Below, one piece after another: positions 16,301-32,570 of a DNA stretch of 64,000 nucleotides (the stretch's first letter is position 1; each line of letters starts with the position of its first letter). The notes under the pieces were generated by a model. It was given only the letters and a program-made list of their open reading frames with translations, did not search any database and was not told where the DNA came from. The position numbers and the translations under genes are program-made. Origin of the DNA: Macrostomum hystrix (lineage: Eukaryota > Animalia > Platyhelminthes); contig CATNEN010000007.1 of NCBI GenBank assembly GCA_950097015.1, positions 4,154,001-4,218,000 on the forward strand, read 5' to 3'.

Positions 16301-16997
16301 GTATTATGCTCATAGTTTAACTTAATATAAAAAATCTGCCTTTTTAAATGAAAAATAAATTTCAACATCTTAAAAAATGCAGAAATTTCTCACACAAAAA
16401 TAATTTTTAATATGTCAACTCAAGAATGGCTTGTTTACAAAGCGTCCAAGTAGGCCGTTTGAAAACAATATACATGAGCTGTATTATTAAGGAACTTGAA
16501 ATTCTCGGTAAAAAAAATTTAACCAGCCCGAATTTAATTAATTTAGCTTCCAGTAAAAAGTTGCTCCTATATTTCATGTCTAGGGAAAACATTGTTGTCT
16601 CTTGTCTTTCGAAAAAATCACTGAATGGTTTTATTGATACCTGCAATATTTCAATCATTATAAATTCTTTTTCTGCTAGATGATTTTTTCACTGAAAGAG
16701 CACTAGAAAACGATTGATTTGAGAACAATAGGCAATAATTCTAGATATAGACACTCTCCCATTTACCGCCAATTTGAGTAGGCATTAATCAGTTTGATTG
16801 GGAGGAATTGTCAGATCGACTGAGCAATTTCACATAAAACTTTATGGATTAGAGAAGGCTGGGAATGGAGCCCCAGACGCAATCCATCAAACTGGCTGAG
16901 AACGAAGCACTTACCTACCTGCGCTGCAGTTTTGCTCAGTTGCTTAGCAACGGCCTCTCATTTCTGAGACACACTTTAATAGCGCAAATTGTTCCGA

Positions 16998-17515
16998 GGT
17001 GAGAGTGGGATGAGGCAGTGGTGAGAGTGGCATGAGGTAGTGGTGAGAGTGGCATGAGGCAGTGGTGAGAGTGGGATGAGGTAGTGGTGAGAGTGGCATG
17101 AGGCAGTGGTGAGAGTGGCATGAGGCAGTGACAGGCACTGGTGAGAGTGGTGCGAGGCATTGGTGAGAGTGGGGCGAGGCAGTGGTGAGAGTGGGGCGAG
17201 GCAGTGGTGAGAGTGGGATGAGGCAGTGACAGGCACTGGTGAGAGTGGTGCGAGGCATTGGTGAGAGTGGGGCGAGGCAGTGGTGAGAGTGGTGCGAGGC
17301 ATTGGCGAGAGTGGCATGAGGCAGTGGTGAGAGTGGGATGAGGCAGTGACAGGCACTGGTGAGAGTGGGGCGAGGCAGTGGTGAGAGTGGTGCGAGGCAT
17401 TGGTGAGAGTGGCATGAGGCAGTGGTGAGAGTGGCATGAGGCACTGGTGAGAGTGGGATGAGGCAGTGGTGAGAGTGGGGCGAGGCAGTGACAGGCACTG
17501 GTGAGAGTGGGTGAC
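16998..17515. repeat. 22-bp minisatellite GAGAGTGG(G/C)(A/G)(T/C)GAGGCAGTGGT with 33-bp variants
   Basis: Tandem units. Explains ORFs 16936-17723. Confidence 0.93.
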
Positions 17516-18169
17516 AGACGCAGATCGCCCACAATGCCGCGGAATCGAGCTCAGACCTTGTGAGATGGCTTGTAGCGAATGGAACCGGATGTCTTGTTGA
17601 CTGCGGCCCGTGCAGCCGTGCAGTTCCCCTTTGAGTGTTTGCAGCTTCTCTGAAATCTTTCTGCTGGCCAGCGCACAGATTCTTCAAATCATTCCGCCGA
17701 GGCTTAATTGTGCCCAGAAGCACAAAGTCCCCCTGAGCTCATCCATTGCGATTCTTCATCCCCCTGTTCCGCCGGGGATCACGCGGGTGATATTAGCGAT
17801 ATGTATCCGAATGAGCGATGGCTTTATCTGTTCTGCGGGCCCCAACGGCCAACTTCTGCCTCAAGGAGGCGATCATCTCACAGAGTTATTACCCCATAAC
17901 TGCTTAGATGCGGTGTCTGTTCAGCCAGCAAAAGCAGAGGGAAAAAGCTGGGTCATTGTTCATAGATTGGCAGCCAAATCAAAGCAGATTTCTGGGGATT
18001 TCGCTTGAACTAAACGGGATTCTGTGGACTAGATGTTGCTTACATACTACTGGCGGGAGGCGAAACGCGTCAGGCCCCTATCGCAACCCCAGGATAATAG
18101 AGAAGGGCTCAGCCTGGGGGGTAACCCCGCGCCAGCAGCAGCAGGCAGGTTCGGCTGGGTCTGCGTTAG

Positions 18170-19500
18170 CAACCTTCATCCTGCCGGTGTGCCGAATGAA
18201 GGCATAGAGCTCTCGGATCCTGCCGGTGTGCCGAATGAAGGCATGGAGCTCTCGGATCCTGCCGGTGTGCCGAATGAAGGCATGGAGCTCTCGGATCCTG
18301 CCGGTGTGCCGAATGAAGGCATGGAGCTCTCGGATCCTGCCGGTGTGCCGAATGAAGGCATGGAGCTCTCGGATTCTGCCGGTGTGCCGAATGAAGGCAT
18401 GGAGCTCTCGGATCCTGCCGGTGTGCCGAATGAAGGCATGGAGCTCTCGGATCCTGCCGGTGTGCCGAATGAAGGCATGGAGCTCTCGGATTCTGCCGGT
18501 GTGCCGAATGAAGGCATGGAGCTCTCGGATCCTGCCGGTGTGCCGAATGAAGGCATGGAGCTCTCGGATCCTGCCGGTGTGCCGAATGAAGGCATGGAGC
18601 TCTCGGATCCTGCCGGTGTGCCGAATGAAGGCATGGAGCTCTCGGATCCTGCCGGTGTGCCGAATGAAGGCATGGAGCTCTCGGATCCTGCCGGTGTGCC
18701 GAATGAAGGCATGGAGCTCTCGGATCCTGCCGGTGTGCCGAATGAAGGCATGGAGCTCTCGGATCCTGCCGGTGTGCCGAATGAAGGCATGGAGCTCTCG
18801 GATCCTGCCGGTGTGCCGAATGAAGGCATGGAGCTCTCGGATCCTGCCGGTGTGCCGAATGAAGGCATGGAGCTCTCGGATCCTGCCGGTGTGCCGAATG
18901 AAGGCATGGAGCTCTCGGATCCTGCCGGTGTGCCGAATGAAGGCATGGAGCTCTCGGATCCTGCCGGTGTGCCGAATGAAGGCATGGAGCTCTCGGATCC
19001 TCTCCGGAGTGGTCAGCTCGTCGATCCCCTGGGTGTGGCCAAGGTGCAGCCTGCAGCCAGGTGGGGATGCGCATAGTTCGGAGTGATAAATGACTTTGGA
19101 AGAAGCCCTGACCTGTGTTGGCCACGCACATCCCCCTAAGGCCGGTTCTGTTGAGAGACAGCAGGTAATCAGAGACTTTCGGTCAATTCCAGGCATCGCG
19201 GAGCGTGCTTGCCTGTAGTCGCCGTTTCCAGGATTGTTAATATCCTTGGCGAGCTGATCAACGAGCTCGTTGCCAAGGATGTTGCTGTGCCCCAGGGTCC
19301 AGACCAGGTTGACCCTGTTGGGGACCGCTAGGCTTTGCATGCTGTTGAAGCACTCTGCACTTTGACTTCGCCGGTTGACACCGACATCCGTCGTGTGGCT
19401 GTCGCGCTCGGGCATGGCGGTGGCAAATCCACGCTTGATTTTTAGAATAGGGGGCTGGTGGTCTACATCGTTCAAGCCGATGTGGCTAAGGTTCCGACGG
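18170..19500 (-). mobile_element. Non-LTR retrotransposon ORF2 3-prime remnant (RNase H and C-terminal tail)
   Basis: AECFNSMQSL...VNLVWTLGHSNILGNELVDQLAK resembles the non-LTR RNase HI motif V.L.WVPGH.GI.GNE.AD.LAK. It is followed by a degraded C-terminal region ending ...LHAFIRHTG. No RT core seen. Confidence 0.72.
18178..19002. repeat. 39-bp minisatellite GATCCTGCCGGTGTGCCGAATGAAGGCATGGAGCTCTCG, about 21 copies
   Basis: Near-perfect units, open in five of six frames. Confidence 0.97.
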
Positions 19501-19949
19501 ATGTAGTCCACGTGAGGATCAGGGTTTTTTTGATCCAGCCTGTGACAGTCACTCTGCCTCCTCCCCCTCTCAGCCTGTGCCAGTCACTCTGCCTCCTCCC
19601 CCTCTCAGCCTGTGCCAGTCACTCTGCCTCCTCCCCATTTAGTATTTTAAAGAGTCCACTAAATGACTGAATAATGTGTATGTGCGGGCGACTAGCCACC
19701 CATTAATTTACGAAAAACACAAAAGCATCTACAGCAAAAAACACTTCCCCAGATGGGTATTATCTTTAAGCAAAACGAAACACTAAATTGAACCGATTCA
19801 ACCATCAATGACGGGCGGAATAGAGCTGAATAATAGAATAAATATTATTGCAATCACTTGATGGTCTTGATTAATCAGAAACACGCTCGTATAAAGTACA
19901 TTCCATGGAGGTTACACTATACTTCGCAACCCTTCAGGATCTTACTTTC

Positions 19950-21660
19950 AAAATCTCACCCCTTCTGAATCCTACTGTCAAAGTCTCACCCCATCTAAAC
20001 CCTACTGTCAAAGTCTCACCCCTTCTGAACCCTACTGTCAAAGTCTCCCCCCTTCTGAACCCTACTGTCAAAGTTTCCCCCCTTCTGAACCCTACTGTCA
20101 AAGTCTCACCCCATCTAAACCCTACTTAAAAAACTGACCCCCTTCTGAACCCTACTGTCAAAGTCTCACCCCTTCTGAACCCTACTGTCAAAGTCTCACC
20201 CCTTCTGAACCCTACTGTCAAAGTCTCACCCCTTCTGAACCCTACTGTCAAAGTCTCACCCCCTCTGAACCCTACTGTCAAAGTCTCACCCCTTCTGAAC
20301 CCTACTGTCAAAGTCTCACCCCTTCTGAACCCTACTGTCAAAGTCTCACCCCATCTAAACCCTACTTAAAAAACTGACCCCCTTCTGAACCCTACTGTCA
20401 AAGTCTCACCCCTTCTGAACCCTACTGTCAAAGTCTCACCCCTTCTGAACCCTACTGTCAAAGTCTCACCCCTTCTGAACCCTACTGTCAAAGTCTCACC
20501 CCCTCTGAACCCAACTGTCAAAGTCTCACCCCTTCTGAACCCTACTGTCAAAGTCTCACCCCTTCTGAACCCTACTGTCAAAGTCTAACCCCATCTGAAC
20601 CTTACTGTCAAAGTCTCACACCTTCTGAACCCTACTGTCAAAGTCTCACCCCTTCTGAACCCTACTGTCAAAGTCTCACCCCCTCTGAACCCTACTGTCA
20701 AAGTCTCACCCCTTCGGAACCCTACTGTCAAAGTCTCACCCCTTCTGAACCCTACTGTCAAAGTCTCACCCCTTCTGAACCCTACTGTCAAAGTCTCACC
20801 CCCTCTGAACCCTACTGTCAAAGTCTCACCCCTTCTGAACCCTACTGTCAAAGTCTCACCCCATCTGAACCCTACTGTCAAAGTCTCACCCCTTCTTAAC
20901 CCTACTGTCAAAGTCTCACCCTTTCTGAACCCTACTGTCAAAGTCTCACCCCTTCTGAACCCTACTGTCAAAGTCTCACCCCTTCTGAACCCTACTGTCA
21001 AAGTCTCACCCCTTCTGAACCCTACTGTCAAAGTCTCACCCCTTCTGAACCCTACTGTCAAAGTCTCACCCTTTCTGAACCCTACTGTCAAAGTCTCACC
21101 CCTTCTGAACCCTACTGTCAAAGTCTCACCCCATCTGAACCCTACTGTCAAAGTCTCACCCCTTCTGAACCCTACTGTCAAAGTCTCACCCCTTCTGAAC
21201 CCTACTGTCAAAGTCTCACCCCTTCTTAACCCTACTGTCAAAGTCTCACCCCTTCTGAACCCTACTGTCAAAGTCTCACCCCTTCTGAACCCTACTGTCA
21301 AAGTCTCACCCCTTCTGAACCCTACTGTCAAAGTCTCACCCCATCTGAACCCTACTGTCAAAGTCTAACCCCATCTGAACCTTACTGTCAAAGTTTCACC
21401 CCATCTGAACCCTACTGTCAAAGTCTCACCCCATCTGAACCCTACTGTCAAAGTCTCACCCCATCTGAACCCTACTGTCAAAGTTTCACCCCTTCTGAAC
21501 CTTACTGTCAAAGTTTCACCCCATCTGAACCCTACTGTCAAAGTTTCACCCCTTCTGAACCTTACTGTCAAAGTTTCACCCCTTCTGAACCCTACTGTCA
21601 AAGTCTCACCCCTTCTGAACCCTACTGTCAAAGTCTCACCCCATCTAAACCCTACTTAAA
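19950..21660. repeat. 30-bp minisatellite AAGTCTCACCCCTTCTGAACCCTACTGTCA, about 57 copies
   Basis: Exactly two units per 60-nt line over long stretches. Confidence 0.97.
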
Positions 21661-21664
21661 AAAA

Positions 21665-21790
21665 CTCACCCCTTCTGAACCGTAATCTCACCCCCTCTCA
21701 ACCCTAATCTCACCCCTTCTGAACCCTAATCTCACCCCTTCTGAACCCTAATCTCACCCCTTCTGAACCCTAATCTCACCCCTTCTGAAC
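21665..21790. repeat. 22-bp derivative repeat CTCACCCCTTCTGAACCCTAAT
   Basis: About 5 copies sharing the core of the 30-mer. Confidence 0.85.
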
Positions 21791-22828: not shown

Positions 22829-22830
<2 letters not shown>

Positions 22831-22889
<59 letters not shown>

Positions 22890-22916
22890 GCAGCAGCAGC
22901 AGCAGCAGCAGCAGCC

Positions 22917-22950
<34 letters not shown>
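22831..22950. repeat. (CAG)~40 microsatellite with two CCG interruptions, immediately after the UBE4A stop (CUG in the mRNA sense)
   Basis: Triplet run begins 4 nt beyond the TGA at 22957-22955. Confidence 0.95.
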
Positions 22951-22954
<4 letters not shown>

Positions 22955-25900
22955 TCAGTGCTTCTGCTTCTCCGCCAGCCACTGCCGCACCCTGTCGCGC
23001 AAGTCTTCATCAGCGGTGACCTGCGACATTGTCAGGGGCTGCCTGTTGAACGGGTCGGTGGGGTCGGACAGCAGGTGCCGCTGAATGGTGGCCCGGTCCA
23101 CCGTGACCCGTGAGGCCGGCAGCACCACAGGGTCGCGCATCAGCGTGCCCATGATGGGATCAATGAACTCCTCCGGGGCGTCCTCGGCGCTTTCGTCCTC
23201 CGCCTGGCGAGCCGCCTCGGCCAGCCTGCAAGCCGCGGAAAGTCAAATAGTCAGCTTCGATCCTCAACCAGAATTGCATTGCTACCCAAATACTTCATAA
23301 TTTATGACCACCATCAGCTACTGGCAAACTTGAAAGTTCACCACGAAGCTTACACGTCTTCAACAGAAACCCCTAGTTCCTCACCGGAAACCCCTAGTTC
23401 CTCACCGGAAACCCCTAGTTCCTCACCGGAAACCCCAGTTTCCTCACCGGAAACCCCAAGTTCCTTACCGGAAACCCCAAGGTTCCTTACTGGAAACCCC
23501 AGGTTCCTTACTGGAAAACCAAGGTTCCTTACCAGAAACCCCAGGTTCCTCACCGGAAACCCCAGGTTCCGAAAACCCCAATGGTTCGGCACTGGAAACC
23601 AGTGTTTCATTGTTTACTGGTTACTCATTTGAAACCTCTTGTCTCCTCGGAAACACAAAAATCTGCTTCCTTCTCAGAAGTCCCTATTTTATGCCTAAAG
23701 GCATCACCCCCCCCGGCAGCCAAAAATGCAGCCCTGACCCACCTAGCGCTCTCAGCGAAGCGGGCAAAGGCGTCAGCCAGTCCAGGATCGGCCACCCGCT
23801 CCAGGAGACTGGCCGCGGCCTGCATGAGGCCGGGCGAATAGGACCGGCTGTCGCGGACCACAGCCGATAGGAAGGCCTCGCCGCCGCTGCTGAGATTCAC
23901 CAGCAGCCGACAGATGGAGGCCAGCAGTTCGCGAGGCTTGAACTGGTAGGCGGACTTGTCGCGCACGGTCAACTCGCTCTGCTTTGGCCCGGCCAGGTGG
24001 GCCAAGAAGTAATTGAGAGTGCCGGCTACTCGATCGGCCAGCATGGGGTGAAGCAGCACCTCCAGCACGTCAGGAGCCTCCGTGAGCAGCTCCAGGGCCT
24101 TCAGAGTGTCCTGGCTTAGCTGGTTGTGGAATCTGGTCAGCCTATGGAGATGGGACATTGGGACATTGCTCTGGGTGAGGGGATCGGTCACTTTCAAAAC
24201 TTAAGATGATTGACAGACTTCTTTTTACTCAGAATGGAAAATTGGCAGACTGCATTGTACTCAGAGTGGTATAATTGGCAGACTGCATTGTACTCAGAAT
24301 GGGATAATTGGCAGACTGCATTGTACTCAGAATGGGATAATTGGCAGACTGCATTGTACTCAGAATGGGATAATTGGCAGACTGCATTGTGCTCAGAATG
24401 GGATAATTGACAGACTGCATTGTACTCAGAATGGGATAATTGACAGACTGCTTTGCACTTAAAATGGGATAATTGAGGGACTAAAGGGACTTTAGGTACT
24501 TAGTGAGGCCGGGCTAACCTGGCTGTGTGCAGGAACTGTGCCTCGGCCTCCTGCCGCTCCCGCTGGTTCTCGCCGTACTCGGGCCATTGGCCGTCCTGGC
24601 GGCGCAGCTCCAGGGACTTCAGCTGGGCAAGGTAGCCCAGGGCTTCGTCTAACAGGAAGGTGGCGTCGTTTAACAGGAGGTTGAGAAACTTCAGGAACAG
24701 AGGCGCCTCGGTATCGTCCAGCCGCTCCATGGCCAGCCTGGCCAGCAGGCAGATCTGCTCTCGGTGGCTGGGGATGGACCATAGACAGTGCAGCACGGAG
24801 TACATCGGCCTTCGATAGCTGAACTTCATCTCGAACTGCACCGATTCGCCGGATAATTCAATGCTAACGAAAACACTGAGCAACGCCGCCGCTGTGTGCG
24901 AGGCCATCGGGTGCGACTCAAGCAGGGCGGCCCGCCGGTACGTTGGCACCTGGGCGGATGGGGATATTTGGGGAGTGGACCTTGGGATATTTGGAAAGTG
25001 GAATAGGGATATTAAGGGAGTAGAATAGGGGATATTTGGGGAGTAGAATAGGGGATTTTTGGCAAATAAAAAAGGGATATCTGAGGAGTGGAATCCATGA
25101 TCCCACTATCCCCTGATAGTGGGAAAGTGGAATGGGGATATTTAGAAAGTGGAAAAGGGATATTTGGATAGTGGAATACGGATATTCTAAAGTGGAATAT
25201 GGATATTGGAAAGTGGAATAGGGGTATTTGGAAAGTGGAATAGGGATATTTGGAAAGTGGAATAGGTAACATTTGGAGAGTGGAAATGGGATATTTTAGA
25301 ATTAGAGAATTAGAGATACGAATTATTCGAAGAGTGTAGCTAGAGATACTTCGAAAATGGAATTCTGTATTTTTAGGGAAATGAACGGGGTATTCAGGGA
25401 GTGTTTATATTGTAGCCCCTACTTTCAACGCGGATCTTCTACCTGCGGCGCGCCCTCCTCGCCGGGCAGCGGGCACAGGGCGCACAGACCCTCGGCCAGG
25501 CTGGCCCTGAGGTGCGGATTCCTCAGCAGTCTGGGGCAACCCATGAACAACAGCAGGAAGCTGAACAGAGGCTCCAGCTGATGCTGCGACATCTCCAGCA
25601 TGTCCGGCCTTTGATGACGAAAGAACACGGCGCACTGGACGACGCCTTCGGCCAGCGACTCCGGCAGCAGCCGAAGCCACCAACCGGAGCCGTCGCCGCA
25701 GGCGTCCAAAATGCCGACACCATCGGGCAACGAGTCGGACCAGCGCGACGGAGTTCCAGCCGACTCGGCCGACGGCGCGTCAGCTAGAGCGAAATGCACC
25801 ATCAGGCGGGAGGTGGCCACCAGGAAGCCGAGCAGCGGCTCCAGCAAGGCAGGAGATCTCAGGCTGGCCCGGTGTGCCAGATAGTGAGCTGTTAGGCGCT

Positions 25901-28900
25901 CCAATGCTGCCACGTGCGACTCGTGCGGCGGCTGCTGCTGCTGCACCGCGTGCTGCAACCGGCTCAGGTTCTGCTGGACCTGGGTGGTGTTTTCAGTCAA
26001 ATAATTTGTTTGGGTAAACGGCGAAGAGTAACTATGAGCTTGGCTTTGCCTCGTCATCTAATTAGCAGGTGCAATTCGATTCCGGTACCTCCTGAAGCTT
26101 TTCGCAGGCTAACGCGAAGCCCAGCCGAACAGCCCGCTGGCACAGGAAGAATAGCTCAGTGAGCACGTGCGGCGGCTCAGTTGGCGCGGTTGCTTGAGCC
26201 GGACTTTCGCCGCTGCCGCCGCCAGTTGAGAGAGGCGTCTCCTTTGCTAGGCTTCGCAACGGGCAGCGGTCACTGCGGACGTATCTGGGCGAGGCGGGTT
26301 TGGTAGCGGATTAACGAGGCTTAACATTGATAGCCTGAATTATTTACTGGCTTGAGATGAAGCTGGAATGAAAGATTGCGTTCAACACTTGGACGATATG
26401 TATCAATCGAAACTTCTGGGAGGGATTGAATAAGTGAAGAGAGGGAGAGAAGAGATGTAGAGAAGGGGAGGGAGAGAAGAGATGTAGAGAAGGGGAGGGA
26501 GAGAAGAGATGTAGAGAAGGGGAGGGAGAGAAGAGATGTAGAGAAGGGGAGGGAGAGAAGAGATGTAGAGAAGGGGAGGGAGAGAAGAGATGTAGAGAAG
26601 GGGAGGGAGAGAAGAGATGTAGAGAAGGGGAGGGAGAGAAGAGATGTAGAGAAGGGGAGGGAGAGAAGAGATGTAGAGAAGGGGAGGGAGAGAAGAGATG
26701 TAGAGAAGGGGAGGGAGAGAAGAGATGTAGAGAAGGGGAGGGAGAGAAGAGATGTAGAGAAGGGGAGGGAGAGAAGAGATGTAGAGAAGGGGAGGGAGAG
26801 AAGAGATGTAGAGAAGGGGAGGGAGAGAAGAGATGTAGAGAAGGGGAGGGAGAGAAGATATGTAGAGAAGGGGAGGGAGAGAAGAGATGTAGAGAGGGGG
26901 AGGGAGAGAAGAGATGTAGTGAAGGGAGGGAGAGAGATGGAGAGATATGGAGAAGGCTGGTAAGATATAACACGGAGTGATGGGAGATGTAGGCGGTGTG
27001 GGGAGCACAGATCAAGACTGGCTGGCGTGGCGAATGAATAAAATGCAAGGCCATCTGACCTGGGATCCACCAACAGCAGGCGGTCCGATCTGGGGTCGGT
27101 GAGCGGGCCAGCCAGCTGCAGCAGGGCAGCGCAGGCATTCAGGCAGCAGCCATCGCTGGCGAAGGCCATGCCCAGCATCAGGGGGTCCATCGAGTGCCTG
27201 GCAGCCAGCTTGGCCTTGCCGGCGTTGGCCTCGAGAAATTCTGCGAACCATAACAACAGCTCACGCTTGGCCGAGCGGAACAGAGCTCTGAAGATGCCGC
27301 CAACCTGTCGGGAATAGAATGACAACTATTTTGTATTGCTTCTGCAAATGTTGTACCTGCGATACTAGCTGCGATACTAGCTGCGATACTAGCTGTGATA
27401 CTTGCTGCGATACTAGCTGTGAAACTAGCTGCGATATTCGCTTCGATACAAGCTGCGCTTCCTGCTGCGATACTAGACGAGCTTCCTGCTGCGATACTAG
27501 CTGTGAAACTAGCTGCGATACTAGCTGCGATACTAGCTGTGAAACTAGCTGCGATACTAGCTGTGAAACTAGCTGCGATACTAGCTGCGATACTAGCTGC
27601 GATACTAGCTGCGATACTAGCTGCGATACTAGCTGCGCTTTTAACTGCGCTACCAGCGATTCTACTCGAGACTCTAGCTTCAAGACTTAGCGCTCGTACT
27701 TGGATACTAAACATATTATATGCAAGTAAAACAGCTCACCTGGGATAAATAAATACCGCCAAGATCCCACAGGGCTCGCTCAGCCGCATCGTAGGCCCGC
27801 TGGGACATCTGACCAGTTGACGGAAACAGCGGGTCCGGCTGCTGCACCCCGCCCAGCTGGGGCAGGCCGCTGGGGGACAGCAGGCGGCCCAGCACTGTGC
27901 CGACCTGCGCCTGGCGACCGGCTCCCTCCACTGTCAGCGGCTTATCAAGGCGAGACAGGAGGGGCGGGAAATACAGGCACGATTTGAGATTTCTGTGATC
28001 GCTACAGTCTCTGAGAATGAGTAGTTTCAAGAATGATTTTCGGGATAAGTAGGATTTTCGGGATTTCTAGAATTATTTTTGGGATTTGTTGGATTTTCGG
28101 GGTGAGTACCATTTTTAGAGAGGGTAGGAGTTTCTGGACGAGTTTTAAGGTAAAATATTAAGCTAGGATTAGGATAATTTTTATATCTAAAAAAGCAACA
28201 GCTCACCTGCTGCAGGCGAGAAGCAGCCAGCAGAGCTCTGGCGCAGGCTGGCAGGCGGGCCAGATGAAGCAGCAGCACCAGTAGGCGGGGCTCAGTCAGC
28301 AGCGGGCAGTGCAGCGATTCAAAGTGCCGCTCGTCGCGCAGCACAGCCCGACAGACGCCGGCAACGAACTGGCGGACAACAAGAGGAGAGGCGGATGCAG
28401 CGCCTGCAGAGTCAACAGCGCCAGGCAGGCAGGCAGTTAGAAAATCGGCGACATCTGCGGGAAGCTCCCGACTATTGCCGCCGCTGCTGATGGCCAATTC
28501 CAGCAGGTGCCTGGCAGCCAAATCCACTGGACACTGGGTGAGGATCTCCGGATTGGCCAGAAATTCTCTGACCTGGCCAGTGAGCTGGGATCGGCACGAG
28601 GAGATCACTTCCGTCAGGCGAGAAGCCACCGGGGCCAAATCAAGCGGAAGTGCCGCCGGATTGGACTCAGCCAGACGGTTAAGACTTTGATAGCAGCGGA
28701 AACTATATGGCACAATGTCGCGAGAAGTTAGCAACAGATCGACCAGGACTTGCCCAATGAGATCCGGACCAATCAGCCTCTGATCCGGATGGAGCTCGGC
28801 CAAGCCGGCCAAATACTTGGGAGTTGCCGCATCGGTCGGCAGGGGCACAGCTGACTGACGTTCGGCATCGAAGGTGACACCGAAGCAGATTTCGGCAGTG

Positions 28901-29085
28901 AAGTTCCACAGCAAGCGGTAGCGATGCTGGTCCGCCAACTGGGATTGCAGATAGCTGCACAGAGGACAGACGGCTCTGTGCTGGGCGTTCTGTACGTGCT
29001 GGTGCCAGCTCCCATCTGAAGCCAGCGCAGCGAACGGATTGCTGCTGACAGCGTCCGCTGTAGGACGCGGCGTCGACTCTGACGA
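22955..29085 (-). CDS. UBE4A: Ubiquitin conjugation factor E4 A (Ufd2-type U-box E3/E4 ligase), 8 coding exons, no genomic ATG
   Basis: Exons 29085-28207, 27940-27740, 27304-27060, 26284-26089, 25979-25443, 24949-24519, 24141-23743 and 23225-22955, all GT-AG with matching phases (3159 nt, 1052 aa plus stop). Motifs: [80 protein letters not shown], and U-box [46 protein letters not shown]. Confidence 0.93.
23365..23580. repeat. 21-bp minisatellite GAAACCCCTAGTTCCTCACCG in UBE4A intron 7
   Basis: About 10 drifting copies. Confidence 0.85.
24236..24475. repeat. 33-bp minisatellite in UBE4A intron 6
   Basis: GATAATTGGCAGACTGCATTGTACTCAGAATGG, about 7 copies. Confidence 0.9.
24958..25300. repeat. 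Degenerate ~22-bp repeat GGGATATTTGGAAAGTGGAATA in UBE4A intron 5
   Basis: Loose tandem copies. Confidence 0.7.
26438..26935. repeat. 27-bp purine-rich minisatellite GAGGGAGAGAAGAGATGTAGAGAAGGG in UBE4A intron 3
   Basis: About 18 near-identical copies. Confidence 0.95.
27355..27640. repeat. 12-bp minisatellite GCTGCGATACTA in UBE4A intron 2
   Basis: Tandem units with GCTGTGAAACTA variants. Confidence 0.92.
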
Positions 29086-29204
29086 CTGGAACAGAAGCCA
29101 GTCAGTAGCAGTCAGTAAGCTTAAGAATAATTTGGTTTACTCGTGAAGACGTTAATACATATATACGTAGTTTAGCGAAGGGTTGTAGGCTAGAAGGGGA
29201 TTTT

Positions 29205-29300
29205 AGAATAGCGGTTAGAGCGTCGGATTCAGAGCTTGAAGGTCAAGGGTTCGATTCCCAGCTCCAATGGAACAATGTGTTGCTGGGCCAGATATGTAGC
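29205..29300 (+). mobile_element. tRNA-derived SINE-like head between LSM14 and UBE4A
   Basis: TAGCGGTTAGAGCGTCGGA...GGGTTCGATTCCC (A and B boxes). No complete cloverleaf. Confidence 0.5.
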
Positions 29301-30011
29301 CAGTGGCACAGCCGTAGTTAATATATGCTTGTACTATCATATGCTTTGTGAAATTAGACATTTTATTCATAACTTTGAATTTAGTGTTGTGCTAGTTTTG
29401 TAGTGTTCGCAATCAGACAATAGAATCGTTGCAGAACAAGGAGTAAGAAACAGATTAACACTTTATGGACTCCAGTTTATAACTTCACTAACATTGCTAA
29501 CAAACTTTACTCGCTCTCCTAATTTTTTTAGTTTTAGTCAAGAAATTTTTGAGAGCCACGAATGTATATTTCTGCGGATAACACTCAAGGGACAAGTGAA
29601 AATTTACTAGAAAAGCTTGCAACTTGGCATCCAGTAAGATCAGGGTCCAATTAAATTGAGTCCTCCTACGAATAACAAACAGTGCACGCGGCATGCTCGT
29701 GTTGAAATTGTATTCGGCGAAAAATTCGCATAAGGTCCCACAGTGGAACATCTGGGGAGTGGGAAATAGCGAGATTGGAAAACACACCGAAGCAAGCTTG
29801 GCTGGCGGTCTTCTTCCAAAAGCGGATCAGGGATCAGGTGTTGCACAGAAAAAACAACGAGCGGTTTGTAAACGATAGCAGACCGTTTGACGAGTAAGGG
29901 CTGAGTCAGAACAATCGGTGTAGGGAAAATTGGGAGCCGTGGCCAAGAATTTATGAAGTCTTTGTCGCTGTTTTTTATTTTCTAGAGTTTCAAACTCTTG
30001 CTCGCAGTGCT

Positions 30012-31427
30012 TCAAACTGGCGAGCGTCGGCTGCTCAGAGGCGCGCCCCGGTGATGCTGATGATTGGGGTGAAAACGCCGGCCCGATAGGCCGAACGTCT
30101 CCCTGTTGAGCGCGTTCTGTCTGGCCGCCTCCTTGCGACCCAGCCTGGCCGAGTCGCCGCCAGCCGCTGTGCTTGGATCAACGTCCACCCGGCTAATGTC
30201 GTCGTAAAAGCTGCGCTCCTTGTCGTAGCCGCAGTGACGATTGGCTGCGGCAGATGACGAGGCGGATGCGGCGGCAGCTGCTGCCGAGTCCGATGCGTCC
30301 TCGTTGGCGGCGTTGTCTTCGGAGCTAGAGCCACCGCCGCTGCCGTTAACCAGTTGACCGGCGTCGATGCCGTTAGCTGCAGAAGACTTCTTAACGGCTG
30401 TCAGCAACAATTTGGCCATTTCAGCGTTGGCCGTCTCAAAGTCGTAATCGGCAGAGAAATATTTGGCCGGATGGGCCGCAGCTTCGGCGATGCCGTTTGG
30501 CTGGTGCGACCGGCGCGAGTGACGACCGCCGCGGCTTCCTCCGATGCCGGCGCCTCCTCCACCGATTCCGCCGCTGCCGACAACTAGACGCGGCGATAGG
30601 CGACGCTGACCGTTGCCTTGGTAGCGACTAAATTGCATTACTGGCCGACCACCGTTGCCATTAACGCCGACGCTTCCACCGCCTCCGCTATGATGTGGGC
30701 GCATTGGGTAGCCATTTGAAGCAGCGGCGGCGAAATCGGCAGCCTGGTACATGGACGCAGGCCGGTATTGCGGATAGTAGCCACCTACGCCGCCCACGCC
30801 ACCGTTCATACCGCTGCCGCCAGCGCCTTGGTTGCCGCGATAGCTAACATTGTACCAGCTGTACCAGTCGTTGCGAGGACGCGACGGTTGCGGAGAGTGG
30901 GCGGGCAGTTGCATCTTGGACGGAGGCGGCAGCAGATAATGATGCTGATGGTTAAACTGACTGCGACCGGGCCTGCCGCCGGCGCCACCGACACGTCCAG
31001 CGGACGTGCCCTTGGCATGACGCCGCCTACCGCTGCCTCCACCAGCCGACCTGCCTCCGTTGGATTCTTCAACATTGCCAGAATTCGCAGCGGAAGAGGA
31101 GCCAGACGGTTTAGCCTGCACCCGGATGATAGCCGGATCTGGCACCGGGCGAGACAGGGGCGTATCAATGACGCGCAACTCGGTGATGTCAGCGGCACGA
31201 AATATGATGTACTCGAATGTGTCCGGCGATGGCGGAACTCTGCGCTCGCATTGGCGATCCTCGGTGCCGAATACGCGAACATGATCCAGCGTCACAGAGG
31301 CCTCCTTCTGATCGATGCTATGCAGGAATCCTTCGTAACGGATGCCGGCTTTTGATAATAGCGATATTGTGGACCCGATGTAGGGCACTTGAGAAGATGC
31401 AGATGAAGCTGATGGTGGAGGTGCCAT
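30012..31427 (-). CDS. LSM14: LSM14/RAP55/Trailer hitch family mRNP and P-body protein, intronless, 471 aa
   Basis: LSm14 domain YIGSTISLLSKAGIRYEGFL..ID...VTL..VRVFGTEDR...FEYIIFRAADI; FDF-like DYDFETANAEM; FFD-like YDKERSFYDDIS; TFG box LNRETFG; RGG/Gly-rich linkers. Confidence 0.93.
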   Translation of the reverse strand: MAPPPSASSASSQVPYIGSTISLLSKAGIRYEGFLHSIDQKEASVTLDHVRVFGTEDRQCERRVPPSPDTFEYIIFRAADITELRVIDTPLSRPVPDPAIIRVQAKPSGSSSAANSGNVEESNGGRSAGGGSGRRRHAKGTSAGRVGGAGGRPGRSQFNHQHHYLLPPPSKMQLPAHSPQPSRPRNDWYSWYNVSYRGNQGAGGSGMNGGVGGVGGYYPQYRPASMYQAADFAAAASNGYPMRPHHSGGGGSVGVNGNGGRPVMQFSRYQGNGQRRLSPRLVVGSGGIGGGGAGIGGSRGGRHSRRSHQPNGIAEAAAHPAKYFSADYDFETANAEMAKLLLTAVKKSSAANGIDAGQLVNGSGGGSSSEDNAANEDASDSAAAAAASASSSAAANRHCGYDKERSFYDDISRVDVDPSTAAGGDSARLGRKEAARQNALNRETFGLSGRRFHPNHQHHRGAPLSSRRSPV

Positions 31428-32570
31428 GCTTGTCTTGGTAATTTATCAACTATTTAAGTATTGGTTTTTTTCTGTCTTGATTATTGTGCCCTCGCTCGCT
31501 TACTAAGCCTAAGAAGTTACTCGCTGACCCCCGCTTTCGTTCGAGACAGGTCTAGAGGGAATGAAAGAGACAACTCGGCCAGCGGCTCGAGCGGCCATAG
31601 ACTAAGAAAATTCGGGACCGACATGCGACCACCCATTAAGATGCAGAAAGACAACACACAGAAAGTGCACTGATTGATCGCAAACAGACTAGCTTGGCCA
31701 TAGACAAATGAATGAAGTCCCGATCCTTCTACTTAGTTTTTGCGTGTTAAGGCTTGTCAGCTTGAGGTTCTCTAAAAGTACATTTACAGCGTGACTGATC
31801 ACGGTCAAAAAGACACGGGAAGACGCCTATAATATTAGTTTCCCTCATATCTCCACCGTTACCTCACTGTTAACTACTCGTTATATAGTTTGCTTCATCT
31901 AAACTTTCACCTGAATATTATATACTTTAGTGTCTCTTGTCTCCACTTTCACGTTGCCATTATCTAATATAGTGTGATTTGTACTTTCAACTGAAGGGCG
32001 CCAGTCTCAACTGCAGGGGCGCTAGTGCATGGGAACATATTTCTGCAGCATTTTTCCATCGCTGGTGCCAGAATGATACTGATTAAGCATTGCACAATGC
32101 ATGCATGTATCTGAGAAAGGCCGCGGGGCGGTCTGGGCAAATTGGTCGAACGTCAGTCACAGCTCGGCAGCTGTTACACTAACACTATTATTTCTTTCAT
32201 CACACCACAGCCCTCTTCCTTTGACCCTATTCTTATAGGTGTGCTTTCAGCTAGGCAGAGTTGCTGGGCGTAATGTTGGCCGACTTTTTCATTTGGTTTA
32301 ACAAGGGTTCAAGGGAGAGGAAAAAAACTGACCTAGGTACCACAACTCTGACACTTTCTGGCATCCCTCCCTGAATTGGTAACCACCTGTAACCTGTGGC
32401 GGCCAGGCCCGCACACAGCGATGTCTGCGGTGCATTCGCACTCAATCTCCGGCCGGGGCTGTTTGACTCACGCTCGCGCACCTCCCCACGCTCTGTATAA
32501 AAATAACTTTTGAAAAGAAAGTTGTGAATGAATCTTTTCTCGCCGCATTTAATTTTGCGAGACGCTAAAT

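What the first reader, a model, noticed from the sequence alone, without database searches (positions are those of the whole stretch)
28207..31427. UBE4A has no start codon: candidate LSM14-UBE4A operon in which a spliced-leader AUG supplies Met1
Seen: the otherwise complete UBE4A reading frame begins at an acceptor (CTTCTGTTCCAG|TCG TCA GAG, 29085) in phase 0. An in-frame TAA lies shortly upstream with no ATG between, and the first in-frame Met is about 340 codons downstream in exon 2. The conserved N-terminal SSNPFAAL motif lies only 13 codons after the acceptor, so little more than a Met is missing. LSM14 ends 926 nt upstream on the same strand. Known: flatworm spliced leaders end in AUG that can serve as initiator, and trans-splicing resolves polycistronic transcripts. 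Inferred: LSM14 and UBE4A are co-transcribed and UBE4A translation depends on SL addition, coupling an mRNA-repression factor to a ubiquitin-chain elongase.
Basis: partly seen in the sequence, partly recalled or inferred. Interest (0 to 1): 0.75.

Follow-up and report, generated by a model that had tools for sequence, protein, structure and literature searches.

The report
Spliced leader supplies UBE4A start codon
In this Macrostomum-type flatworm the ubiquitin-chain elongase gene UBE4A has no start codon in the genome, and RNA assemblies show that the trans-spliced leader, which ends in AUG, is joined exactly in front of its first codon; this mechanism is already known in flatworms, and the proposed operon with the upstream LSM14 gene is not shown.

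Summary
The genes lie on the minus strand.

**Start codon, supported.**
- UBE4A exon 1 (29085-28207, 293 codons) follows the acceptor cttctgttccag.
- An in-frame TAA lies 18 codons upstream with no ATG between. Exon 1 has no in-frame ATG, and the first in-frame Met is codon 338.
- Spliced RNA contigs from two samples of one study carry GCGAAGACTCAATTTATTGCATG joined at 29085, reading AUG-UCG-UCA.
- This matches the 3' end of the published 35-nt M. lignano spliced leader (SL). The genome holds at least 20 exact copies of the 25-nt pattern (SL 3' end plus GT donor), and none lies in the window.
- Exon 1 is under purifying selection (dN/dS 0.23 against M. lignano), so it is translated, which needs the SL AUG.

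**Operon, not shown.**
- The LSM14 mRNA carries no SL and ends sharply at 29470, 384 nt before the acceptor.
- No RNA contig covers the gap.
- The pair meets a published distance rule (under 1 kb), and the adjacency is conserved in M. lignano, but co-transcription is untested.

SL-donated start codons have been known in flatworms since 2006 and are noted for Macrostomum. This scan confirmed the same mechanism before on other DNA of this genome (CHMP6 and others). This is a new member of a known kind.

The parts
30012..31427 (-). LSM14/Scd6-type coding sequence (471 aa, single exon)
   Evidence: ORF. Pfam LSM14 Sm domain 2e-27. DYDFE, FYDDIS and ETFG boxes seen by eye. M. lignano orthologue P0001, E 4.7e-151.
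29470..31513 (-). Extent of the LSM14 mRNA in RNA contigs: 5' ends at 31471-31513 without SL, 3' end at 29470/29471 (3'UTR about 540 nt)
   Evidence: table 8, records 6, 9, 13 and 15 (runs X2, X5, X6; two studies). There are no loose ends on these contigs.
29087..29469 (-). 383-nt stretch between the LSM14 3' end and the UBE4A acceptor AG, with no RNA contig. It is either the outron of a read-through precursor or a short promoter plus outron.
   Evidence: tables 2 and 8 (zero depth in four runs). No conserved non-coding block against M. lignano apart from the SINE.
29181..29283 (+). tRNA-like SINE fragment (B-box GGTTCGATTCC), antisense to the genes
   Evidence: At least 837 candidate copies in the genome, 79-86% identical. 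Not a tRNA gene by ARAGORN or Rfam.
29137..29139 (-). In-frame TAA, 18 codons upstream of the first UBE4A codon
29086..29097 (-). Trans-splice acceptor cttctgttccag. TTCCAG fits the published M. lignano SL-acceptor motif [T/C]TNCAG.
   Evidence: Motif from PMC8629364.
28207..29085 (-). UBE4A exon 1, 293 codons with no in-frame ATG. In RNA it is joined at its 5' end to the spliced leader, which supplies the AUG.
   Evidence: records 12 and 14 carry the loose letters ATGCAATAAATTGAGTCTTC(GC) beyond 29086. Translation. dN/dS 0.23 against M. lignano.
27941..28206 (-). Intron 1 (GT..AG, 266 nt), removed in the RNA contigs
   Evidence: The loose end at 28207 equals window 27911-27940.
27740..27940 (-). 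UBE4A exon 2 (67 codons). It holds the first in-frame genomic ATG, at 27808-27806 (codon 338).
22955..27307 (-). Remaining UBE4A exons, with approximate coding pieces 27307-27059, 26292-26080, 25994-25440, 24952-24503, 24152-23727 and 23227-22958, then the stop codon. They encode the Ufd2P core and the U-box.
   Evidence: Pfam Ufd2P_core positions 49-626 of 628 and U-box 5e-30. tblastn of M. lignano UBE4A P0042 covers residues 4-1053. The best PDB U-box match is UBE4A 1WGM, 5e-32.

Best explanation
UBE4A of this Macrostomum-type flatworm depends on trans-splicing for its start codon. Its pre-mRNA carries a 3' acceptor (TTCCAG) directly in front of codon 2 (Ser) and has no start codon of its own. 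The 35-nt spliced leader ends in AUG, is transcribed from tandem SL RNA genes elsewhere in the genome, and is spliced onto position 29085. The mature mRNA therefore reads ...UUGCAUG|UCG UCA GAG, and translation starts at the leader's AUG to give M-S-S-E-S-T-P-R...

Shown here: the SL-exon 1 junction in RNA, the frame, the SL RNA genes, and the lack of any genomic in-frame AUG before codon 338.

Inferred: that ribosomes actually start at the SL AUG. This follows from purifying selection on exon 1 and from the proven use of the SL AUG in Schistosoma.

LSM14, upstream on the same strand, is made as a separate, non-trans-spliced mRNA that ends 384 nt before the acceptor. Whether UBE4A is transcribed by read-through from the LSM14 promoter (an operon) or from its own promoter in the gap is unresolved. 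I put the operon at about 0.35.
For: -: contigs from two samples (X5 record 12, X6 record 14) lie on 28207-29086 and run on into ATGCAATAAATTGAGTCTTC(GC) on the + strand. That is GCGAAGACTCAATTTATTGCAT on the minus strand, and the G at 29086 completes the ATG.
- The same contigs skip intron 1, so they derive from RNA.
- at least 20 exact genomic copies of the 25-nt pattern GCGAAGACTCAATTTATTGCATG|GT. The copy read (L002) shows the full SL exon CGGTCTCTTACTGCGAAGACTCAATTTATTGCATG|GTAAG with a Sm-like site and three hairpins. The exon is identical to the published M. lignano SL (PMC8629364).
- no SL-like sequence lies in the 64-kb window, so the join is in trans.
- there is no in-frame ATG between the upstream TAA and codon 338. 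The only ATGs in exon 1 are out of frame.
- exon 1 against M. lignano gives dN 0.33, dS 1.42 and dN/dS 0.23.
- the UniProt M. lignano UBE4A models also lack a Met (FQSSLNPF..., SSLNPF...).
- PMC9851317 and PMC12582326 report that flatworm SL AUGs serve as initiators (Cheng et al. 2006).
Against: - The RNA evidence comes from assembled contigs of one study (two samples), not raw reads. Contigs drop rare isoforms, so a minor cis-spliced or non-SL form cannot be excluded.
- There is no protein or ribosome-profiling evidence for initiation at the SL AUG.
- The AUG context (U at -3, U at +4) is weak.
- One M. lignano scaffold (L013) has a genomic ATG at the homologous position, so the dependence may not be universal in the genus.
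Confidence: 0.88

Rival explanations
1. LSM14 and UBE4A form a two-gene operon. One promoter upstream of LSM14 drives a precursor. Cleavage and polyadenylation at 29470 release LSM14, and SL trans-splicing at 29085 caps UBE4A and gives it its AUG.
For: - The genes share a strand, the upstream gene carries no SL and the downstream gene does.
- The 384-nt spacing is about 280 nt without the SINE. That is below the 1000-bp rule used to call M. lignano operons, including those whose first gene is not trans-spliced (PMC8629364).
- The LSM14-to-UBE4A adjacency and orientation are conserved in M. lignano scaffold NIVC01000763.1, even though dS is about 1.4.
Against: - No contig or joint bridges 29087-29469 in four runs.
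- The spacing is well above the roughly 100-bp mode of M. lignano operons.
- The same paper finds that distances between a non-trans-spliced gene and a trans-spliced one are unimodal, with no operon peak.
- In M. lignano the gap is about 1.97 kb from stop to start.
- Macrostomum has a single SL, so SL use does not mark operon genes.
Confidence: 0.35
2. UBE4A is a monocistronic trans-spliced gene. Its own compact promoter lies in the 383-nt gap, and a short outron is replaced by the SL.
For: - The LSM14 mRNA ends cleanly at 29470 in three runs of two studies, and nothing downstream is covered.
- A TATA-like GTATATATGTAT lies at 29166-29155, about 75 nt upstream of the acceptor.
- About 60% of M. 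lignano trans-spliced genes are not assigned to operons (PMC8629364).
Against: - No transcription start data are available.
- The TATA-like string lies in AT-rich sequence and may be chance.
- No non-coding block is conserved with M. lignano.
- The gap is short and partly taken up by a SINE.
Confidence: 0.5
3. The true start lies in an undetected upstream cis-spliced exon (for example ATGATA|GT near 29340), or translation starts internally at Met338 or at a non-AUG codon. The SL form would then be incidental.
For: Contigs cannot exclude rare isoforms. An earlier case in this genome had its own ATG in a tiny upstream exon (note s1-316733).
Against: - No joints to 29085 and no contig over 29300-29360 in any run.
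- The assembled, and therefore dominant, form in both samples is the SL form.
- Exon 1 is under purifying selection over 275 aligned codons, so an internal start at Met338 would waste a conserved domain.
- The M. lignano models also begin at the same acceptor without a Met.
Confidence: 0.05

Closest known systems
Schistosoma mansoni mRNAs that use the 3'-terminal AUG of the spliced leader as initiator (Cheng et al. 2006, J Biol Chem 281:733, as cited in PMC9851317 and PMC12582326)
   Same: The SL ends in AUG followed by a GU donor. It is spliced directly in front of codon 2 of an ORF that has no genomic start codon, in frame.
   Different: The flatworm lineage is different (free-living Macrostomorpha) and so is the gene (UBE4A). 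Here there is only RNA-junction evidence and no translation assay.
SL trans-splicing and distance-defined operons of Macrostomum lignano (Ustyantsev & Berezikov 2021, PMC8629364; Wudarski et al. 2017, PMC5730564)
   Same: The 35-nt SL and its GTAAG donor are identical, and the acceptor motif [T/C]TNCAG is the same. The pair fits that paper's operon rule: same strand, under 1 kb apart, second gene trans-spliced, first gene allowed to be non-trans-spliced.
   Different: That rule rests on distance only. Here the spacing (384 nt) is off the 100-bp mode and no precursor RNA is seen. The start-codon role of the SL was not analysed there.
Note in the M. cliftonense / M. hystrix genome paper that the Macrostomum SL probably contains the final ATG as translation start (Wiberg et al. 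2023, PMC10468722)
   Same: The same genus-level SL ending in ATG. The authors kept the ATG on reads for annotation purposes.
   Different: That is a general remark with no gene-level demonstration. Here one gene is shown to have no alternative.
C. elegans SL2-type operons
   Same: The proposed logic is the same: upstream 3'-end formation coupled to downstream trans-splicing.
   Different: C. elegans has a dedicated SL2 and spacing of about 100 nt. Macrostomum has one SL, so nothing marks downstream operon genes. Nematode SLs do not end in AUG.

Membership tests
SL-donated initiator AUG (flatworm type) | The organism has SL RNA genes whose exon ends in AUG directly before the GU donor | tested here: met
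   At least 20 exact copies of ...TTGCATG|GT. The full SL exon, GTAAG donor, Sm-like site and hairpins are seen in L002.
SL-donated initiator AUG (flatworm type) | The mature mRNA carries the SL joined at the acceptor in front of the ORF | tested here: met
   loose ends of 20 and 22 nt in two samples match the SL 3' end exactly and are joined at 29086/29085. The same contigs are cis-spliced at intron 1.
SL-donated initiator AUG (flatworm type) | The SL AUG is in frame with the conserved ORF, and no genomic in-frame AUG could give the same N-terminus | tested here: met
   AUG|UCG UCA GAG. TAA lies 18 codons upstream, and the first in-frame ATG is at codon 338.
SL-donated initiator AUG (flatworm type) | Translation actually starts at the SL AUG | not testable with these tools
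   Indirect only: dN/dS 0.23 on exon 1. This needs N-terminal proteomics or ribosome profiling.
SL-resolved operon | Same-strand neighbours at a short intercistronic distance, with the downstream gene trans-spliced | tested here: met
   384 nt from the LSM14 3' end (29470) to the acceptor (29085). The SL is on UBE4A only.
SL-resolved operon | Precursor RNA spanning both genes | tested here: inconclusive
   No contig or joint lies over 29087-29469 in four runs. Contigs cannot show rare precursors.
SL-resolved operon | No independent promoter or transcription start in front of the downstream gene | not testable with these tools
   No 5'-end data are available. A TATA-like string at 29166-29155 has unknown meaning.
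UBE4A / Ufd2 E4 ubiquitin-chain elongase | Ufd2P core followed by a C-terminal U-box | tested here: met
   Pfam PF10408 positions 49-626 across five exon pieces and PF04564 at 5e-30. Yeast Ufd2 structures hit at 1.5e-14. The U-box matches UBE4A 1WGM best (112.9 bits, against 79 for UBE4B). The M. lignano orthologue is named E4 A by UniProt.
LSM14 / Scd6 / RAP55 | N-terminal LSm domain plus FDF and FFD-TFG boxes | tested here: met
   PF12701 at 2e-27. The DYDFE, FYDDIS and ETFG boxes were seen by eye only, and the Pfam FDF model did not hit.

The most novel reading that the evidence does not exclude
At this one position a trans-splice acceptor and a genomic start codon may be interchangeable.

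- The window species has ctgttcCAG|TCG TCA.
- The UniProt M. lignano models read F-Q|S-S with no Met.
- M. lignano scaffold NIVC01000763.1 has ctgtttcATG TCC TCG at the aligned place, and its exon 1 is otherwise 282/282 identical to the UniProt model.

If that difference is real and not an assembly error, a one- or two-base change switches UBE4A between an SL-donated and a self-encoded Met1 while the protein stays M-S-S.... That would be a live example of how SL-dependent start codons arise or revert. Separately, LSM14-UBE4A may be a conserved operon.
Probability: 0.3. Interest if true: 0.5.

Novelty: new member of a known kind. Interest (0 to 1): 0.3.

Why it matters
- **Annotation.** Gene finders that require a genomic ATG will truncate this UBE4A to Met338 or drop it. 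The public M. lignano models already start without a Met. Macrostomum annotation pipelines need to add the SL AUG.
- **Biology.** All UBE4A protein output depends on trans-splicing. The case adds a clean, RNA-supported example in a free-living flatworm that can be made transgenic, so the mechanism could be tested directly.
- **Operon.** The operon idea would matter only if precursor RNA is found. Nothing here links LSM14 function to UBE4A.

Tried and rejected
- **tRNA gene in the gap.** ARAGORN and Rfam found none. The tRNA-like piece is a SINE fragment.
- **Exon 1 family scans.** Pfam and PDB sequence scans gave nothing.
- **Word search, N-terminal 200 aa.** No hits.
- **Word search, residues 1-330 of M. 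lignano UBE4A P0042.** No hits. The length filter hides its own cluster, whose representative is 309 aa.
- **Exhaustive phmmer with exon 1.** One cluster only, from M. lignano. The N-terminal roughly 290 aa has no detectable relatives outside Macrostomum. The claim that SSNPFAAL is a widely conserved N-terminal motif could therefore be checked only against M. lignano. The human motif is known to me from memory only.
- **Paralogue in the own genome.** None; UBE4A exon 1 is single copy.
- **Is M. lignano UBE4A 'g2' of transcriptional unit Mlig003010?** No paper or held supplement mentions it.
- **DNA for P0041 and P0042.** Not on record.
- **First idea on M. lignano Met1.** I first thought it aligned with Val13 of the window protein, with a homologous acceptor 11 codons upstream. 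I dropped this in favour of the acceptor = ATG alignment after seeing the DNA alignment and the FQSS N-terminus.
- **ORFs at 18081-19583 and 16947-17738.** The first gave only repeat-driven spurious Pfam hits and the second gave none.
Full report
**Observation.** Both genes lie on the minus strand.
- The sequence cttctgttccag|TCG TCA GAG puts a canonical acceptor in front of position 29085.
- Translation of 29145-28207 gives HE*TKLFLSLLTATDWLLFQ|[21 protein letters not shown].... The in-frame TAA is at 29139-29137, there is no Met before the acceptor, and SSNPFAAL starts at codon 14.
- Exon 1 (29085-28207) has 293 codons. Its four ATGs all lie in one other frame.
- The first in-frame ATG is codon 45 of exon 2, at 27808-27806, which is codon 338.
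- The LSM14 ORF runs 31427-30012 and has a Pfam LSM14 Sm domain at 2e-27. Its stop lies 926 nt upstream of the acceptor.

**RNA evidence.** One look-up found eight public runs that hold the stretch. I laid four of them on 28150-32150.
- In two samples of one study (X5, X6; about 45 Mb of contigs each, the size of a transcriptome), contigs lie on 28207-29086 and continue beyond 29086 with the + strand letters ATGCAATAAATTGAGTCTTC(GC).
- On the gene's strand this reads GCGAAGACTCAATTTATTGCAT. It is followed by the G at 29086, which is shared between the acceptor AG and the leader's ATG, and then by TCGTCAGAG.
- The RNA therefore reads ...TTGCATG|TCG TCA GAG, with the AUG directly in frame.
- At their other end the same contigs jump from 28207 to letters that match 27911-27940 exactly. 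Intron 1 (28206-27941, GT..AG) has been removed, which shows the contigs derive from spliced RNA.
- No joints to 29085 from any upstream cis exon were reported.

**The leader is a true trans-spliced leader.**
- The 25-nt pattern, leader 3' end plus GT, occurs at least 20 times exactly in the window's genome (220 Mb). The copies sit in arrays with a period of about 11.7 kb on contigs C15, C17 and C42.
- There is no copy within the 64-kb window, even with three mismatches allowed.
- One copy (L002) shows the full exon CGGTCTCTTACTGCGAAGACTCAATTTATTGCATG, then the GTAAG donor, a Sm-like AUUUUUAG and flanking hairpins.
- The 35-nt exon is identical to the published Macrostomum lignano SL. The window's TTCCAG fits the published SL-acceptor motif [T/C]TNCAG (PMC8629364).

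**Gene identity and completeness.**
- Open-frame pieces downstream carry Pfam Ufd2P_core positions 49-626 of 628. The last exon carries a full U-box at 5e-30.
- The U-box matches the solved UBE4A U-box (1WGM, 5e-32) better than UBE4B. The core matches yeast Ufd2.
- The exhaustive profile-free search with exon 1 found a single cluster, from M. lignano. One member is a 1053-aa protein that UniProt names Ubiquitin conjugation factor E4 A.
- Local tblastn with that protein covers its residues 4-1053 in eight window pieces between 29046 and 22961. The gene is therefore complete except for a start codon.
- The N-terminal roughly 290 aa has no detectable relatives outside Macrostomum.

**Is exon 1 translated?** Against M. 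lignano, 275 aligned codons of exon 1 give dN 0.33, dS 1.42 and dN/dS 0.23. The exon ends at the same place in both species. A conserved 293-codon reading frame with no genomic AUG can be translated only from the SL AUG or from a non-AUG codon. Leaky scanning would first meet out-of-frame AUGs. That ribosomes start at the SL AUG remains an inference. It rests on established work in Schistosoma (Cheng et al. 2006, cited in PMC9851317 and PMC12582326).

**Comparison with M. lignano.**
- The LSM14 orthologue (P0001, BOX15_Mlig003010g1) lies on scaffold NIVC01000763.1. UBE4A follows it on the same strand, about 1.97 kb from stop to start. The adjacency is therefore conserved.
- The gap there holds a satellite and a copy of the same SINE family in the other orientation.
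- At the UBE4A 5' end the scaffold reads ctgtttcATG TCC TCG TTG AAT CCG.
- The two UniProt M. lignano models begin FQSSLNPF... and SSLNPF... without a Met. Otherwise they match closely: P0042 is 282/282 identical to the scaffold's exon 1.
- MAFFT aligns the window's ctgttcCAG|TCGTCA with the scaffold's ctgtttcATGTCCTCG.
- So the acceptor of the window species and of one M. lignano version sits exactly where the other M. lignano version has an ATG. Both kinds of protein begin M-S-S. The window species also has 13 extra codons before NPFAAL.
- I cannot tell whether the M. lignano difference is a real variant or an assembly error.

**The operon question.**
- LSM14 contigs reach 31471-31513 at the 5' end without any SL letters. 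They stop at 29470/29471 in three runs of two studies, which indicates a sharp 3' end. No contig covers 29087-29469.
- Of these 383 nt, about 100 are a SINE fragment.
- By the published M. lignano rule the pair would be called an operon: same-strand neighbours under 1000 bp apart, second gene trans-spliced, first gene allowed to be non-trans-spliced.
- The same paper reports that operon spacing peaks near 100 bp. It also reports that distances between a non-trans-spliced gene and a trans-spliced one show no operon peak (PMC8629364).
- Macrostomum has one SL, so SL use does not identify downstream operon genes.
- A TATA-like string lies about 75 nt upstream of the acceptor, and its meaning is unknown.
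- I rate co-transcription at about 0.35 and an own promoter at about 0.5. Contigs cannot decide between them. There is no evidence for functional coupling of LSM14 and UBE4A.

**Novelty.**
- The use of the flatworm SL AUG as initiator has been known since 2006.
- The M. cliftonense / M. hystrix genome paper remarks that the Macrostomum SL probably contains the start ATG (PMC10468722).
- Earlier follow-ups of this scan confirmed the same mechanism on other DNA of this genome (CHMP6, s1-408126; two genes in s1-316733).
- This is a well-supported new member of a known kind. Its practical value is for annotation, and it carries a small evolutionary lead on acceptor/ATG interchange.

**Limits.**
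- Only one reads call was allowed, and it returned assembled contigs, not raw reads.
- Both SL-bearing samples belong to one study.
- No exon-joined model was sent to any search tool.

Noticed in passing
L002 1840-2002 (-) and 1501-1535 (-); arrays on G000 C15, C17, C42: In the one array unit read (L002), a U1 snRNA gene (Rfam RF00003, 151.7 bits) lies about 300 nt upstream of the SL RNA gene on the same strand. The SL RNA genes sit in tandem arrays with a period of about 11.7 kb.
   Followed up: partly
window 29181-29283 (+); L013 13084-13144: A tRNA-like SINE fragment with a B-box has at least 837 candidate copies genome-wide. A related copy lies upstream of M. lignano UBE4A in the opposite orientation relative to the gene, which suggests independent insertions.
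   Followed up: partly
window 28025-28101, 27357-27637, 26441-26935, 24961-25296, 24205-24475, 23366-23570: Six of the seven UBE4A introns hold a different minisatellite (periods 39, 12, 27, 22, 33 and 21 nt). Several keep long open frames that mimic exons.
   Followed up: no
window 22829-22954 and 19943-21681: (AGC)42 lies directly after the UBE4A stop codon. A 30-nt satellite of 58 copies lies further downstream, with strong GC skew.
   Followed up: no
window 27739-27308 versus L013 15009-15467: The window gene has an intron, holding the 12-nt minisatellite, between P0042 residues of about 350-358. The M. lignano scaffold has one uninterrupted coding piece there. This is a possible intron gain or loss within the genus.
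   Followed up: no
L013 13385 versus proteins P0041 and P0042: M. lignano scaffold Mlig_3_7 has ATG where the UniProt models from the earlier assembly read Gln or start at Ser. The rest of exon 1 is 282/282 identical to P0042. This is either a variant or an assembly error at the exact SL acceptor / start position.
   Followed up: partly
window 30102, 30462, 30850, 30956: Single-base differences in the LSM14 mRNA contigs relative to the assembly are shared by several runs. These are probably strain polymorphisms.
   Followed up: no
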